The notes beneath the pieces are model-generated. The model saw only the letters and a list, made by a program, of their open reading frames with translations. It did no database searches and was not told where the DNA came from. A stretch of DNA of 64,000 nt from the IMG/VR virus record IMGVR_UViG_3300032053_000002, positions 62,001 to 126,000 of that record. The stretch is one strand, 5' to 3'. The translations under genes were made by a program, and so were the position numbers. How positions within the stretch are numbered: the first letter of the stretch is position 1; each line of letters begins with the position of its first letter. Positions 1,331 through 37,193 of the stretch are shown here, piece after piece.

Positions 1331-3019
1331 TTAGAATTTATCACTAATGAAATCGGACATTATTGTTGGAACGTTTGTATCGAAGCCAACTACATCGAGT
1401 GCGGAAGTATCCATCGGATCCGCTATCGTAAATTCGGTGCTCGTCATTCCGACAACAATAAGTTTCACGTCATGCCCAACTTGGTCTCTGTATTGTTTCA
1501 TTGCTTGAGTTGGATGAATTTTACCTGCCCAAGTTTCGCAATCCGTATAAATAACAATCGCGTCAAAATCCTTTTTGTTATTTTTCGCCCAAATTGCTGG
1601 CAATGCGCAATCAGTTGCTCCAAACGGTAATCCGTTAGTATAATCCGTTATTTCGTTCAAAGACATTCCTGAGTGAACCTTTAACTCGGCGACGTTTGAT
1701 TGCCCAGATAACCAATCTCCTCCAGTGAATCCGATAATAGCGTGATTCTTTTCAGTTCTCATCGTTACCAATGCGAGAGCCGCAGACGCTTCTCTCGGAG
1801 AAAGGTTTAGAATGTTAGCAACACCACCATTAGACATTGAACCGGATACGTCAAGAGCTAACAATATTCTTTTCCCGGTCGGTTCAACATATTTGAACGC
1901 TAAATAAAACGCATCGTTCAGCGCTTTAACAATTTGCGGAACAACATTCCATTGACCAGACCCGCGCATACCGTGACCAGATTCGTAAGTTTTCAGCGCC
2001 ATCAAAATCGCAACAGGATGGATTCTTGCCTTACGCAAATTATCTTCGTTGGTGATTTTATCCACGACAAAGTTTATTTCAGTGAAGTTTCCAGATTCCA
2101 AAATACCGTGTTTGGATAAGTTACCCAGATTACGAATAAGAGCCGTCATGGGAGTTTTTGGCAACAGAGTTTCCCAGACTTTCTTTCCCATGAATTGAGT
2201 CGGAATTGCTTCTCTCGGAATGTTGTATTGGTTTATTAATGCAACGATTTCGTCTTCAGTTGTCGCCTTTTTCGCTAACTCGAATGCGTAAATTAAAGGA
2301 ATATCTTTCACGTCTTCAATGGTATGCGGAAAAGTTTTTTCAGTGCTCTTATCTTTCATCAGTCTTTCGCCACCAACTCCGTGCGTCATCCACGCGAATG
2401 CGAGATTGAATATCCCATCCGTCGCTTGAGCGTGAGACAATCTCAATAAGTCTCGGTGAGACCATCCATCGCGAGATTGATATTTAACGGCCTGGAGTGC
2501 TAAAGAATCGATATTCTTTTCAGTATACCATTTAGCAACTCCATTTCTTAAACCGCGGCCCCACCCACGAAATCCGTTCACGTATTCGGCGAAATGAAAT
2601 AGATGAGTTCCGATTCTGGCGACTTTTGTAAGATTTTCTAATGCATATTTTTTCGCCACGTCGCTACCAAATCCGACTACCATCGCTAGCGCGAACAATG
2701 CCGGGTCGTTGTTTGGAGCACGCCCACTTTCAGACACTTCTACGATTCTATCGACTAATTTTTTCGCCGTGTCTTGCGTTTTACAGTTGTCGATAAGAGT
2801 TTTAATGTTATCCGCATTTTTTACCGTTAACTCTTTCGCGGTTGCGTAATAAGTTGGCTGATCGCTTCCCAGAATTAAAAAGCGATCAAGGACTTTCCAT
2901 TCATCCAATTTGAAAACCACGCCTCCGGCATAGTTTTTAGCCATGTCTTTCTCACGACCTGGAATTACCTGTCGTTGAGAAGTTTTTTTAGTGTTGTAAT
3001 GTTTTTGGTAAGTTTGCAT
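1331..3019 (-). CDS. rsr: Ro60/Rsr TROVE-domain RNA-binding protein (TROVE + vWA)
   Basis: FLILGSD..TYY, RIGTHLFHF, KYQSRDGWSHRDLLRLSH, MTALIRNLG, ALDVSGSM and TDCETW (MIDAS) motifs; 562 aa. Confidence 0.96.
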   Translation of the reverse strand: MQTYQKHYNTKKTSQRQVIPGREKDMAKNYAGGVVFKLDEWKVLDRFLILGSDQPTYYATAKELTVKNADNIKTLIDNCKTQDTAKKLVDRIVEVSESGRAPNNDPALFALAMVVGFGSDVAKKYALENLTKVARIGTHLFHFAEYVNGFRGWGRGLRNGVAKWYTEKNIDSLALQAVKYQSRDGWSHRDLLRLSHAQATDGIFNLAFAWMTHGVGGERLMKDKSTEKTFPHTIEDVKDIPLIYAFELAKKATTEDEIVALINQYNIPREAIPTQFMGKKVWETLLPKTPMTALIRNLGNLSKHGILESGNFTEINFVVDKITNEDNLRKARIHPVAILMALKTYESGHGMRGSGQWNVVPQIVKALNDAFYLAFKYVEPTGKRILLALDVSGSMSNGGVANILNLSPREASAALALVTMRTEKNHAIIGFTGGDWLSGQSNVAELKVHSGMSLNEITDYTNGLPFGATDCALPAIWAKNNKKDFDAIVIYTDCETWAGKIHPTQAMKQYRDQVGHDVKLIVVGMTSTEFTIADPMDTSALDVVGFDTNVPTIMSDFISDKF

Positions 3020-3734: not shown

Positions 3735-3971
3735 TTATATCGTCGCCCAAACTATCCATCCGAATATATTAGATAATAAGAAGATAACCCACAAAGTCAA
3801 CGCCGACCATTCTCGTTTTCTTAACGCCCAATAAATCCAGAAAAAGTTCGAGAATATCCAAACCGGCCAACACCAAATAATCTTAAACGCATTGAGAATA
3901 ATGCCGATCAAAGATAATGATGTTGCAATCCATCCAACAATTTTTAATTTTTTGATTTGATTTTCTTCCAA
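3735..3971 (-). CDS. Small PnuC-like membrane protein
   Basis: GWIATSLSLIGIILNA..WCWPVWIFSN; start moved to TTG 3971 (GGAGG upstream) because the tracked start lies inside the Y RNA. Confidence 0.6.
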   Translation of the reverse strand: MEENQIKKLKIVGWIATSLSLIGIILNAFKIIWCWPVWIFSNFFWIYWALRKREWSALTLWVIFLLSNIFGWIVWATI

Positions 3972-3990
3972 GAAACCTCCGCAAAAATAA

Positions 3991-4141
3991 ATATCGAACA
4001 AGATACGGTGACGACTATGGCCTTTCGGCCAGGCGGACGCTCTACCCCTGAGCTACGGTCGCTAACTAATAGTCTGACCGGCGAAGACTTGAACTTCGCG
4101 ACATTCTGCATAGGATAATCATCAATCCATCGGCTCGATAT
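3991..4141 (-). ncRNA. yrlA: YrlA-type Y RNA (circularly permuted tRNA mimic with Ro-binding stem)
   Basis: ATATCGAGC-C-GA pairs with TT-GTTCGATAT (bulged C); order T-arm (GCGAAG TTCAAGT CTTCGC), loop-closed acceptor (CGGTC/GACCG), D-arm (GCTC AGGGGTA GAGC); about 1 kb upstream of rsr. Confidence 0.88.
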
Positions 4142-4293: not shown

Positions 4294-4307
4294 ATATAAA
4301 ATAAATT

Positions 4308-4367
4308 GACGGATAATTTGCTGAAAAGCGCTTTTCTCTGACGGTAACGTTTCTCTATCGACCCATC
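4308..4367 (-). ncRNA. Short Y-like RNA, copy C
   Basis: GATGGGT-C-GA / TT-ATCCGTC; GAGAAACG-TTACC ... AAAAG-CGCTTTTC. Confidence 0.65.
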
Positions 4368-4430
4368 AAAATCCCGAATCCGTATTTCTACGAACTCATT
4401 ACTGTTCCTGCACATGGCAGGTCAGCTAAA

Positions 4431-4850
4431 ATAAAAGAGTGGTGAGATTAGCATTTACTCACAAGCCTGAACCCGGACAGATTTTTAGTAGCACACCAGT
4501 TAACAGGCGTCCCGGTTAACTTTATATGGTGGAGAGAACCAGCGTCTCTCAACATTCACTAGTAGTAGCTATGTATGCCAACAAGTGGGGGATTTTAGCA
4601 AAAGCACCGCCTTTTTCGAATGAACCCCCGGAGTTGACCAACTCCCGAGAAAGGCGTCTACTTATCTGTGCGAATCGTGCAACCAACGAAAAACTTTTTC
4701 AAGTTTGTCGCCGTACTTTACCTACCTACATAGGTATTCAGTCACACTCATACTCATCAAATCCGAACAAATATGTAGAACCGATTCTACATAGCTAAAT
4801 AGCATAGTACGGTTTCGATGAGTTTCGTCGCCACGCAGGGCGACAAATAA
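4431..4850 (-). ncRNA. Unidentified large structured RNA(s)
   Basis: No credible minus-strand ORF; several perfect stems and crossing pairings. Confidence 0.55.
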
Positions 4851-4870
4851 TTTTCAAAGAACAAAAAACT

Positions 4871-4973
4871 GACGGATAAAAGTGGACAACGAGATTGGCG
4901 AGCGTCACGTCGTGCTTCATCGCACGGCTTAGCCGTGCTTTCTATTGAGATAACGTTGTTCCGACGACCCATC
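4871..4973 (-). ncRNA. Y-like RNA, copy D
   Basis: GATGGGT-C-G / T-ATCCGTC terminal stem identical to copy C; ACAACG-TTATC; GCACGGC/GCCGTGC hairpin. Confidence 0.6.
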
Positions 4974-4990
4974 AAATTTATATTTATAAA

Positions 4991-5114
4991 TAGCGACTGT
5001 GACTCTATGGGTACTCTTAGTTAAGCATTCCAGCTTAAGGTAAGGAGTTCTATACAGTAAGCCATAGTCTATCTGTATCGATCATATTCCCTACGTATGC
5101 ACGAGTAGTCGCCA
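4991..5114 (-). ncRNA. Unidentified structured RNA
   Basis: TGGCGACT/AGTCGCTA closing stem, AT-rich flanks. Confidence 0.4.
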
Positions 5115-5122
5115 AATAAAAC

Positions 5123-5368
5123 TTTTAGGATAAGGAGCGACCAGGATGGGAATTACTTTTTTTCCCGTGTTTCAAGCCACGTTTTTATTTACATTGTTTT
5201 CTCAATGAGAACTTTTACGAAATCCTAAAACGGGAAATTTTTACGTGTTTCAAGCACGGAACAATTACTCACTACTTATTTTGTTTGAAGTGAATGGTTA
5301 GACGCTCAACCCTAACCTTTTTTCCTAATTACAAGTATTATGATAACCCTGCATCATCGACCCTAAAA
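5123..5368 (-). ncRNA. Long Y-like RNA, copy E (246 nt)
   Basis: TTTTAGGGT-C-GA / TT-ATCCTAAAA; CAGGGT/ATCCTG; GGGTTATC; two CGTG-(G)CTTGAAA-CACG hairpins. Confidence 0.65.
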
Positions 5369-5373
5369 ATTAT

Positions 5374-5450
5374 TGAGAGATCCCACAGGTCGGCATTTCT
5401 GCGTTTGGTACTTTAATAGCGCCACGATTTACTGTGGATTTACTCTCTCA
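5374..5450 (-). ncRNA. Unidentified structured RNA
   Basis: GAGAGA..ATCCACAG / CTGTGGGATCTCTC stem enclosing a GCA-GAAA-TGC hairpin; follows a boxA-like motif. Confidence 0.5.
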
Positions 5451-5622
5451 TACTTCAAAGAACAAAATGCAAGATTCGCGAAAGGAAATGATTCACGCCC
5501 AGAGATTCGCGAATCGAGAGCCCATTCTACGCATGGTAGACGGGACGAATATAAATATATGTATTTTTTATAAACATACTTATTATACAACCATTAAAAT
5601 AAAAAGTTCCATTTTTTTCATT

Positions 5623-36017: not shown

Positions 36018-37193
36018 CTATTTTTTCATCAATAAAAACTTAACCTTTTTAGAACCCATCTCACCAAGAACCGACTTCGGGTCTAATTCAAAGTTATCTA
36101 CCATTCTAAAAATTATTCCGGTTAAAGATTTATTAACATTTTCTAAAACCGCGAATGCTAACTCTTTACGAGACATGGTTTTGGACATTCCTCGGTAAAT
36201 CTCTCCTTCTTTCAATAAATAGTCAACCAAATTAGAATATTTTTCCTTTAATGATTTATATTCTTCGCGGACTTTGTCAGGAAGTTTATTTAAGTATACC
36301 TCAAATTCTTTCATTTCATTATTCATTAAAACATTTATTAAATTATTAGTTATTCCTTCGCCAGTTGCGACATGATGTAACTGAATGTATTTCGGAGATT
36401 TAATTTTAACTCTTCCGATAACTTCATCTTCTTCAAACTGAGATACAACAAATCCTTCAAAGTCGTTCCCGTTCAGATTTTCTTTATCTGCAATATTAGA
36501 CAATTCCATTATATCATTTACGTCTTTTAAATCGAAAAGTTTAGGAAATCTAATAGGCAAGCCATTAAAAACACTTTCCATCTTTTTTCGAATAGATTTA
36601 TAGAATATGTTGAAATCTTTAGAAGTTTCATTTTCTTTTAATCCAATAAATACCAATTCTTTTTTAGAATAATCAACAACTATTCGAGCCGACGAGTGAA
36701 CCAACTCAAACATATAAGTTTTGTCTTGCTCAAATTGAGAAGTTAAGATATTAAAATCTTCTCTGGAAATAATATCAAAAAATAACTCTTCAAATGGAAT
36801 TTTATCAGTAGTAGTCGCGTCTTTAGCATCAATAGTTCCATTGGTTGCAATTCGCCATTTTTCATCATAAAAATAAACTTTAATAATTGAACCATCCACT
36901 TTTTCTATAATATAGGATTTTTCTAAATCTATGTTAAATGCATGAGATTCTCCGTAATTCCAGAATTTGAAAAATGGATTACATACTATTTTCCAGGTAC
37001 CATTTTCTAAAATTATTCCGCGAGATTCGCGAACGATTGAATTGGAAAAATCAGAATTAAATTGATTATATTTAAATAAAACAAGATTGTTTTTTGCAGA
37101 AATAATAAGATTAAAGGGGTCTTTTTTTAAGTCCTCTATGGCTCTATTTTCCAAGAATTTTTGTAGAGATAACATTGTAATATTTTCTTTCAT
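36018..37193 (-). CDS. T4 Rnl1-type RNA ligase
   Basis: RESRG, KFWNYGE, EKVDGS (motif I), FELV, EGFVV, KIKSPKY. Confidence 0.93.
   Translation of the reverse strand: MKENITMLSLQKFLENRAIEDLKKDPFNLIISAKNNLVLFKYNQFNSDFSNSIVRESRGIILENGTWKIVCNPFFKFWNYGESHAFNIDLEKSYIIEKVDGSIIKVYFYDEKWRIATNGTIDAKDATTTDKIPFEELFFDIISREDFNILTSQFEQDKTYMFELVHSSARIVVDYSKKELVFIGLKENETSKDFNIFYKSIRKKMESVFNGLPIRFPKLFDLKDVNDIMELSNIADKENLNGNDFEGFVVSQFEEDEVIGRVKIKSPKYIQLHHVATGEGITNNLINVLMNNEMKEFEVYLNKLPDKVREEYKSLKEKYSNLVDYLLKEGEIYRGMSKTMSRKELAFAVLENVNKSLTGIIFRMVDNFELDPKSVLGEMGSKKVKFLLMKK

What the first reader, a model, noticed from the sequence alone, without database searches (positions are those of the whole stretch)
5123..5368. 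246-nt Y-like RNA with twin UUGAAA-loop hairpins
Seen: the largest Y-type member carries two near-identical hairpins CGTG-(G)CTTGAAA-CACG (5244-5258 and 5166-5181) in an A-rich body. Known: UGAAA-type loops form T-loop motifs, and paired T-loops grip the tRNA elbow in T-boxes, RNase P and the L1 stalk. Inference: this RNA may clamp tRNA elbows and present tRNAs or fragments to Ro60.
Basis: inference. Interest (0 to 1): 0.7.

Follow-up and report, generated by a model that had tools for sequence, protein, structure and literature searches.

The report
Large phage Y-like RNA beside Ro60
The 246-base stretch is a real, conserved, folded non-coding RNA that very probably partners the Ro60 protein of a jumbo phage, but its two look-alike hairpin loops are a quirk of this one strain and not a conserved tRNA-gripping device.

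Summary
On the minus strand, 5123-5368 carries CGUG-CUUGAAA-CACG (5258-5244) and CGUG-GCUUGAAA-CACG (5181-5166). They share a 12-nt exact repeat (shuffle P about 0.008).

The RNA is real. Eleven distinct homologs of 214-329 nt lie upstream of Ro60 genes 55-67% identical to the window's Ro60 (1331-3019, minus). All come from uncultured large-phage contigs.

The 17-bp closing stem, hairpin H4 and hairpin H5 show compensatory changes. The stem carries 5'-GGGUCG / UUAUCC-3'. This module occurs three times in the window, all in the Ro60-upstream RNA cluster. It recurs next to other phage Ro60 genes, 46 of 50 times on the Ro60 strand. So this is best read as an oversized Y-like RNA.

The tRNA-elbow clamp idea is not supported:
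- H5 is a conserved hairpin, but each of the 11 sequences has a different loop.
- H3 sits where relatives have unrelated hairpins.
- Near-identical strains in two other sediment metagenomes read CUGGGAA in H3 while H5 is unchanged.
- UGAAA is not in the loop register used by known T-loop hairpins.

No Rfam family matches the RNA. No expression data were found. I class it as a new variant of a known kind, of moderate interest.

The parts
5123..5368 (-). Whole large Y-like RNA, 246 nt. A closing stem P1 encloses five hairpins, H1-H5, joined by A-rich linkers.
   Evidence: Eleven distinct homologs align end to end. No Rfam match. No minus-strand ORF of 20 aa or more lies inside it; one of 20 aa only touches its 5' end.
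5360..5367 (-). P1a 5' strand (UUUAGGGU). Together with 5358-5359 it gives the invariant GGGUCG (5358-5363), the presumed Ro60 contact.
   Evidence: Invariant in all 11 sequences. Two of the eight P1a pairs show compensatory changes (UA to CG, UA to AU). It resembles GGUCCGA / GNCGAAN0-1G (PMC4201824).
5124..5131 (-). P1a 3' strand (AUCCUAAA), preceded by the conserved UU of UUAUCC (5132-5133).
   Evidence: 98.9% of cells paired in helix 1.
5347..5356 (-). P1b 5' strand (UGAUGCAGGG, with G bulged).
   Evidence: Pairs 20/319 (GC 6, AU 5) and 21/318 (CG 6, AU 4, GC 1) covary.
5138..5146 (-). P1b 3' strand (UCCUGGUCG). It holds a second, nearly invariant GGUCG.
5296..5317 (-). H1 hairpin (GGUUAG...CUAACC).
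   Evidence: MFE. A hairpin occupies the same position in homologs, with compensatory changes (cols 76-82/110-116).
5267..5295 (-). H2 hairpin. The sequence is specific to this lineage.
   Evidence: MFE only. Relatives have a different, longer H2.
5244..5258 (-). H3, the first 'twin' hairpin: CGUG-CUUGAAA-CACG.
   Evidence: Variable among homologs. The loop is polymorphic in strains (5250 T>C, 5252 A>C).
5192..5207 (-). H4 hairpin: CAUUG-AGAAAA-CAAUG.
   Evidence: Conserved, with AU to GC covariation.
5182..5191 (-). Conserved single-stranded A-tract UAAAUAAAAA, between H4 and H5.
   Evidence: Nearly invariant columns.
5166..5181 (-). H5, the second 'twin' hairpin: CGUG-GCUUGAAA-CACG.
   Evidence: The stem is conserved with covariation (GC/AU/GU). 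The loop is not conserved.
5156..5165 (-). Conserved GGAAAAAAAG tract, 3' of H5.
   Evidence: GGAAAAA is nearly invariant.
1331..3019 (-). Phage Ro60/Rsr gene, the presumed protein partner.
   Evidence: Pfam TROVE 4e-36 and vWA_Ro60 4e-59.
4870..4974 (-). Second Y-like unit with the same GGGUCG/UUAUCC stem, 105 nt.
   Evidence: Homologs in relatives.
4307..4368 (-). Third Y-like unit with the same stem, 62 nt.

Best explanation
This is a phage-encoded non-coding RNA of the Y-RNA kind, about twice the usual size. Its 5' and 3' ends pair into a 17-bp bulged stem that carries GGGUCG opposite UUAUCC. The same module closes two smaller RNAs beside it, and small RNAs next to Ro60 genes of many other phages. 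I infer that this stem docks on the phage Ro60 ring.

The stem encloses five hairpins. Only the 3' part is conserved: hairpin H4, a nine-A-rich linker, hairpin H5 and a GGAAAAAA tract. I infer that this platform is the effector side, which ties Ro60 to a host partner. By analogy with the Ro60-Y RNA-PNPase complexes of Deinococcus, Salmonella and Thermus phage phiLo, the most likely partner is a 3'-5' exoribonuclease such as PNPase.

The two look-alike hairpins are H3 and H5. H5 is kept as a hairpin whose loop is free to vary. H3 is a variable hairpin. Their likeness in this strain is a local accident, either duplication or conversion, and not a functional pair.

Shown: conservation, the fold, linkage to Ro60, and non-conservation of the loops. 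Inferred: Ro60 binding, and the identity of the partner.
For: - Ro60 gene on the same strand, 2.1 kb downstream.
- Homologs of the RNA lie upstream of Ro60 in every related contig that reaches far enough.
- P1: 17 pairs, 98.4% of cells paired against 30-46% when the partner is slid. There are 17 cells with changes on both sides, and 0 of 500 shuffles reach the covariation score.
- H4 and H5: 94% paired, 6 pairs with changes on both sides, 0 of 500 shuffles.
- The stem module occurs three times in 64 kb, all within 4307-5367 on the minus strand.
- In 79 other phage Ro60 loci the module occurs 50 times. Of these, 46 are on the Ro60 strand, and many lie within about 150 nt upstream of the gene.
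- GGGUCG resembles the Ro60-contacting GGUCCGA and the bacterial GNCGAAN0-1G (PMC4201824).
- Phage Y-like RNAs that bind phage Ro60 and host PNPase are known (PMC12135203).
- Natural strain variants spare P1, H4 and H5. They cluster in the H3 loop and its linker.
Against: - No direct evidence of transcription: no RNA run was listed for this stretch.
- Binding to Ro60 is untested. The complex predictor does not fold protein-RNA pairs.
- The RNA is 214-329 nt, whereas characterised Y RNAs are 80-130 nt (PMC4201824).
- The motif keeps GNCG but not the AA of GNCGAA.
- No hit to Rfam YrlA or Y_RNA, even at E up to 10.
- Only 11 sequences support the covariation, and they are related.
- The effector partner is pure analogy.
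Confidence: 0.62

Rival explanations
1. The two UUGAAA loops fold as T-loops, interdigitate, and grip the elbow of a tRNA or tRNA fragment, presenting it to Ro60.
For: - Interdigitated T-loops are the known RNA device for elbow recognition (PMC4810234, PMC3664808).
- UGNRA pentamers are the commonest T-loop sequence (bioRxiv 10.1101/2022.12.26.521914).
- One relative, L055, has an H3 loop (UGAAA)AU that fits that consensus exactly.
- The window's H3 read as (CUUGA)AA fits a relaxed Y[G/U]NRA.
- The phage is rich in tRNA biology: 44 tRNAs and an RNA ligase.
Against: - H5 loops differ in all 11 sequences, and none fits a T-loop in register.
- Most H3 loops are unrelated, for example GUAUG, GUGAG, AUGUG.
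- Strains 99% identical carry CUGGGAA in H3, which loses the position-5 A, while H5 is unchanged. The pair is therefore not co-maintained.
- UGAAA lies at loop positions 3-7 and 4-8, not 1-5.
- The stems are only 4 bp.
Confidence: 0.04
2. The long closing stems are processing signals, for example RNase III sites, that cut a polycistronic transcript of tRNA and non-coding RNAs into pieces. On this reading the 246-nt unit is a spacer or by-product with no Ro60 role.
For: - The RNAs lie head to tail with tRNA-Met behind one conserved promoter-like element.
- M. smegmatis Y RNAs are cut from one precursor (PMC4201824).
- Each unit is closed by a stem.
Against: - A mere processing stem need not keep GGGUCG/UUAUCC invariant while its flanking pairs covary.
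- Nor need it recur beside Ro60 genes of distant phages on the same strand.
- The inner H4-H5 platform is conserved too.
Confidence: 0.12
3. It is a protein sponge or regulatory small RNA that works without Ro60. The A-tracts (ARN-like triplets) and GGA motifs would bind Hfq, CsrA or ribosomal protein S1 of the host.
For: - The single-stranded UAAAUAAAAA and GGAAAAAA tracts are conserved.
- AGGA-like motifs occur in the 5' part of several homologs.
Against: - This does not explain the strict linkage to Ro60 or the shared stem module.
- There are only two or three such motifs.
- The host is unknown.
Confidence: 0.1
4. It is a cis-acting leader, riboswitch or attenuator for downstream genes.
For: It lies at the head of a transcription unit, after a promoter-like element.
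Against: - What follows is more non-coding RNA and a tRNA, not an ORF.
- There is no expression-platform-like alternative pairing.
- No Rfam riboswitch hit.
Confidence: 0.03

Closest known systems
Bacterial Y RNAs: YrlA/YrlB of Salmonella and Mycobacterium, Yrn1/Yrn2 of Deinococcus (Rfam RF02553; PMC4201824)
   Same: Encoded within about 2 kb of Ro60 on the same strand, and several per locus. The ends pair into a long stem that carries a GNCG-type motif near the 5' end. They are probably cut from a common precursor.
   Different: Two to three times longer. There is no tRNA-like T-arm/D-arm module; that module sits in a separate RNA at 4005-4125. The motif is GGGUCG-NN-G rather than GNCGAAN0-1G. 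No score against the Rfam model.
Yrl1/Yrl2 of Thermus phage phiLo (PMC12135203)
   Same: Phage-encoded Y-like RNAs upstream of a phage Ro60. They offer the model of hijacking host PNPase.
   Different: There is no sequence relation. The phiLo RNAs have ordinary Y-RNA architecture (stem, bulge, stem) with a CGAA motif. Here a five-hairpin insert replaces the loop.
Metazoan Y RNAs (Rfam RF00019)
   Same: A bulged terminal stem with GGUC-C-GA opposite UUGACU, compared with GGGU-C-G opposite UUAUCC here. A U-rich tail follows the stem.
   Different: Size, loop content (pyrimidine-rich there, A-rich here), and no homology.
Interdigitated T-loop module of T-box Stem I, RNase P and the L1 stalk (PMC3664808, PMC4810234)
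   Same: Only that a UGAAA pentamer occurs in two loops.
   Different: The register is wrong. The loops are not conserved, not co-maintained in strains, and about 60 nt apart with a hairpin between them.

Membership tests
Y RNA (functional class) | Encoded next to Ro60, on the same strand | tested here: met
   Ro60 is at 1331-3019 on the minus strand. Homologs lie upstream of Ro60 in related contigs; in L055 the RNA is about 2.4 kb upstream.
Y RNA (functional class) | 5' and 3' ends pair into a long stem | tested here: met
   17 pairs, 98.4% of cells paired, compensatory changes at 4 pairs.
Y RNA (functional class) | Stem carries the Ro60-binding motif (GGUCCGA / GNCGAAN0-1G) | tested here: inconclusive
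   GGGUCG is invariant and matches GNCG, but the AA is absent. The module does track Ro60 genes across phages.
Y RNA (functional class) | Length 80-130 nt | tested here: not met
   246 nt here; homologs are 214-329 nt.
Y RNA (functional class) | Physically bound and stabilised by Ro60 | not testable with these tools
YrlA (Rfam RF02553) | Covariance-model score at or above 69 bits | tested here: not met
   No hit on 5123-5368 at E up to 10, nor on homologs at E up to 1.
YrlA (Rfam RF02553) | tRNA-like module (T-arm plus D-arm) | tested here: not met
   No tRNA or YrlA signal in the RNA. The module is present instead at 4005-4125.
T-loop hairpin | Pentamer Y[G/U]NRA at loop positions 1-5, followed by two nucleotides | tested here: inconclusive
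   H3 read as (CUUGA)AA fits only the relaxed form. H5, GCUUGAAA, does not fit. UGAAA is out of register (consensus from bioRxiv 10.1101/2022.12.26.521914).
Interdigitated T-loop elbow clamp | Both T-loops conserved across homologs | tested here: not met
   The H5 loop is different in all 11 sequences. The H3 loop is unrelated in most, and polymorphic in strains.
Interdigitated T-loop elbow clamp | Head-to-tail intercalated three-dimensional core that stacks on the tRNA elbow | not testable with these tools
   Needs structure probing or a solved structure.

The most novel reading that the evidence does not exclude
A clade of uncultured jumbo phages carries a new, oversized class of Y RNA. A standard Ro60-docking stem is fused to a five-hairpin, A-tract-studded platform. 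This RNA heads an 'RNA operon' of three Y-like RNAs, a tRNA-mimicking YrlA-like RNA, a manA-like RNA and tRNA-Met. Together these would re-programme Ro60 towards several different host partners during infection.
Probability: 0.45. Interest if true: 0.6.

Novelty: new variant of a known kind. Interest (0 to 1): 0.4.

Why it matters
Y RNAs are thought to decide what Ro60 does, by gating it or tethering it to other enzymes. All characterised examples are small. A conserved family twice that size, with an invariant docking stem and a separate conserved platform, would give a clean natural experiment on how the effector side of a Y RNA is built.

The family sits in a cluster of several Y-like RNAs in phages that also carry dozens of tRNAs and RNA-repair enzymes. 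It also gives a simple sequence rule, GGGUCG...UUAUCC closed by four covarying pairs, that finds Y-like RNAs beside phage Ro60 genes which the Rfam model misses.

The specific tRNA-clamp idea should be dropped.

Tried and rejected
- Exact scan of IMG/VR for the hairpin CGTGCTTGAAACACG gave 25 hits, all unrelated contexts and judged chance.
- blastn of the whole 1.65-kb RNA cluster against GenBank phages found no match.
- A single-protein Ro60 scan of IMG/VR found only one 42% relative. An alignment-based scan was needed.
- The 3' stem pattern CTGGTCGNNNNTTATCCT in IMG/VR gave 108 stretches; none of the 106 newly fetched ones has both the upstream GGGTCG and the A-tract, so no new member was found.
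- A covariance model of the 3' 100 nt, run over 96 loci including 79 other phage Ro60 loci, found no member outside the clade. It found no second copy in the 293-kb genome either.
- Rfam at E up to 10 on the locus, and at E up to 1 on eight homolog loci, gave nothing on this RNA.
- The protein-RNA complex prediction was not folded by the tool, so it is no evidence either way.
- The RNA-seq run search listed none for 5100-5400. The one metatranscriptome contig found covers only 4658-4829.
- Two reviews on bacterial Y RNAs were not held in the library.
- A coding reading was rejected. No minus-strand ORF of 20 aa or more lies inside the RNA, and indels among homologs are not in threes.

Full report
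**Setting.** The window is bases 62001-126000 of a 292.7-kb IMG/VR virus record, estimated 91% complete. The genome is AT-rich, with GC mostly 31-40% across the window. Nearly all genes and 44 tRNA genes lie on the minus strand. ORF 1331-3019 (minus) is a Ro60/Rsr orthologue: TROVE 4e-36, Ro60 vWA 4e-59. Between 4001 and 5620 there is no credible ORF. The finding lies in this gap.

**The observation.** On the minus strand the stretch reads UUUUAGGGUCGAUGAUGCAGGG ... CCUGGUCGCUCCUUAUCCUAAAA. CGUG-CUUGAAA-CACG lies at 5258-5244 and CGUG-GCUUGAAA-CACG at 5181-5166.
- The copies share a 12-nt exact repeat, which only 0.8% of dinucleotide shuffles reach.
- The repeat extends into the flanks at 89% identity over 18 nt.
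- The minus strand folds with z = -2.4; the plus strand with z = -0.9.

**Is it a real RNA?** Ro60 proteins 55-67% identical to the window's exist in metagenomes. I fetched their contigs. I also scanned IMG/VR and JGI metagenomes for the 5' stem motif. Together these gave ten further distinct homologs besides the window, 214-329 nt long. Where the contig reaches far enough, they sit upstream of Ro60 on its strand.

In the alignments the two ends and the last ~100 nt are strongly conserved, and the middle is not.
- The closing stem has 17 pairs in two helices around an internal loop. 98.4% of cells are paired, against 30-46% when the 3' partner is slid.
- Pairs 20/319 (GC 6, AU 5) and 21/318 (CG 6, AU 4, GC 1) covary, as do two pairs of the outer helix. 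No shuffle of 500 reaches the covariation score.
- Hairpins H4 (5207-5192) and H5 (5181-5166) are 94% paired, with six pairs changed on both sides. That alignment was fitted to the model, so it leans towards the structure. RNAalifold on the plain MAFFT alignment finds the same helices.
- No minus-strand ORF of 20 aa or more lies inside the RNA.

I conclude that this is a conserved structured RNA.

**Link to Ro60.** The stem has an invariant 5'-GGGUCG opposite UUAUCC-3'. GGGU pairs with AUCC, and four covarying pairs lie outside them.
- A scan for this module finds three units in the 64-kb window: 5124-5367, 4870-4974 and 4307-4368. All are on the minus strand and inside the Ro60-upstream gap.
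- Relatives have the same series of a large, a medium and a small unit.
- In 79 other phage Ro60 loci, 42-56% identical, the module occurs 50 times. Of these, 46 are on the Ro60 strand, many within about 150 nt upstream of the gene. Most are 60-135 nt long. My rough estimate is that about 14 would occur by chance on both strands together. A few hits lie inside the Ro60 coding sequence and are false.
- The motif resembles the Ro60-contacting GGUCCGA of animal Y RNAs and the GNCGAAN0-1G of bacterial YrlA (PMC4201824).

This is the basis for calling the RNA Y-like. Binding itself is inferred, because the complex predictor does not handle protein-RNA pairs.

**What is unusual.** Characterised Y RNAs are 80-130 nt (PMC4201824). 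This class is 214-329 nt.
- A covariance model of its 3' 100 nt finds it only in the clade with Ro60 at least 55% identical. It is present once in the genome.
- No Rfam family matches it or its homologs.
- The tRNA-like Y RNA expected from the literature is a different element, at 4005-4125. It has a T-arm (GCGAAGUUCAAGUCUUCGC) and a D-arm (GUAGCUCAGGGGUAGAGC), and a sub-threshold YrlA score of 22 bits against a cut-off of 69.

**The twin hairpins.** H5 is a universally kept hairpin. Its stem covaries (CGUG/CACG, CGUAG/CUACG, CGUGA/UCACG, CAUG/CAUG).

Its loop, including the closing fifth pair where one forms, reads:

| Sequence | H5 loop |
|---|---|
| window | GCUUGAAA |
| L053 | GCUCGACA |
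| L055 | GUUUGGUU |
| L048 | GUUUAGUU |
| L028 | GAAUAAAC |
| L050 | GAGUAAAC |
| L030 | AUAGUUU |
| L037 / L044 | GUGAAUC |
| L041 | GUGGUUC |
| L043 | GUGAUUC |

H3 occupies a position where relatives have other hairpins, for example CUUGUC-GUAUG-GACAAG or CAUGUC-GUGAG-GACAUG. Within the nearest subclade a UGAAA-containing element does recur. L055 has CCUUG-UGAAAAU-CAAGG, and L053 has UUGUUCCGCUUGAAAU without a convincing stem.

Contigs from two other sediment metagenomes carry the same phage at about 99% identity (X2 across the whole RNA cluster, X3 over 5066-5605).
- They read 5250 T>C and 5252 A>C, which turns the H3 loop into CUGGGAA.
- H5, H4 and P1 are untouched.
- Five of the seven differences inside the RNA in run X2 fall between 5231 and 5252.

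So the likeness of the two loops is not maintained even within the species.

**T-loop criteria.** In tRNA and in FMN and cobalamin riboswitches the T-loop is the first five nucleotides of a seven-nucleotide loop. The consensus is UUCRA or (YGNRA)NY (bioRxiv 10.1101/2022.12.26.521914). The elbow clamp needs two such motifs interdigitated (PMC4810234).
- Here UGAAA is at loop positions 3-7 in H3 and 4-8 in H5.
- In the proper register H3 reads (CUUGA)AA, which is only a relaxed fit. H5 does not fit.
- Only the H3 of L055 fits well.
- The stems are 4 bp and marginally stable.

The clamp model therefore fails its own stated test. I give it about 4%.

**Mechanism.** Best supported: a Ro60-docking stem plus an effector platform. 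The conserved part of that platform is H4, UAAAUAAAAA, H5 and GGAAAAAA. By analogy with the Ro60-Y RNA-PNPase complexes, including that of phage phiLo (PMC12135203), I propose that the platform tethers Ro60 to a host exoribonuclease. This step is inference only.

Context fits RNA surveillance or repair:
- 44 tRNAs;
- an Rnl1-like RNA ligase at 36018-37193;
- an RNase T-like gene and Thg1 near Ro60 in relatives.

The rivals are scored in their own sections: processing stems without a Ro60 role, a protein sponge, and a cis-regulatory leader.

**Limits.**
- Eleven related sequences are few for covariation statistics.
- No transcript evidence exists for this stretch.
- The host is unknown.
- The middle of the alignment (H1-H3) is unreliable.

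Noticed in passing
window 4005-4125 (-): A YrlA-like RNA with a clear tRNA-like T-arm and D-arm. It scores below the Rfam cut-off (22 bits against 69). It is probably the phage's true tRNA-mimicking Y RNA.
   Followed up: partly
window 4432-4769 (-); also L030:5435-5779: A manA-like RNA with a 182-nt insert (34 bits, E 1e-6, below the cut-off of 55). It sits inside the Ro60 RNA cluster and is conserved in relatives. One metatranscriptome contig (run X9) covers 4658-4829 at 95-99% identity.
   Followed up: partly
window 4987-5112 (-) and 5369-5560 (-): Two further non-coding stretches in the cluster. The first is closed by a GGCGACU/AGUCGCU stem and folds with z = -2.5. The second is a ~190-nt leader that is absent from relatives; two of them, L028 and L050, have a 53-54 aa Arg/Lys-rich ORF there instead.
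   Followed up: partly
window 5575-5612 (-), 15195-15241 (-); L028, L030, L048, L053, L055: A conserved promoter-like element, AATGGAACTTT followed 18-20 nt later by TATAAT/TATAAA/TATACT. It heads the RNA cluster in all relatives and recurs inside the cluster. It is not a sigma-70 -35 box, so it may be a phage-specific promoter.
   Followed up: partly
window 4870-4974 (-) and 4307-4368 (-): Two smaller Y-like RNAs (105 and 62 nt) with the same GGGUCG/UUAUCC stem. The motif UUCUUUGAA recurs near two of the units, a few nt 3' of the 105-nt Y-like RNA and inside the 5369-5560 leader (4853-4866 and 5454-5467), and may be a processing site.
   Followed up: partly
window 12629-12702 (-), 19704-19779 (-), 15422-15502 (-): An amber-suppressor-type tRNA (anticodon CUA), a tRNA with a four-base anticodon call (caga), and a tRNA-Asp with anticodon AUC. 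All lie within a 44-tRNA set, which hints at stop-codon or frameshift decoding.
   Followed up: no
window 3735-4001 (-): An 88-aa ORF that matches only the C-terminal third of the NMN transporter PnuC. It is a likely gene fragment, lying between the RNA cluster and Ro60. Relatives have Ro60 directly after the RNAs.
   Followed up: no
L036:1780-1802, L045:1709-1731: The 5' stem motif TTTTTAGGGTCGGAGATGCAATGTTA occurs without the rest of the RNA, in what looks like coding sequence. It may be a relic of the RNA or a chance match.
   Followed up: no
window 5138-5146 (-): The 3' strand of the stem holds a second nearly invariant GGUCG (CUGGUCG) facing the 5' GGGUCG. This makes the stem pseudo-symmetric, and raises the possibility of two Ro60 contacts.
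   Followed up: no
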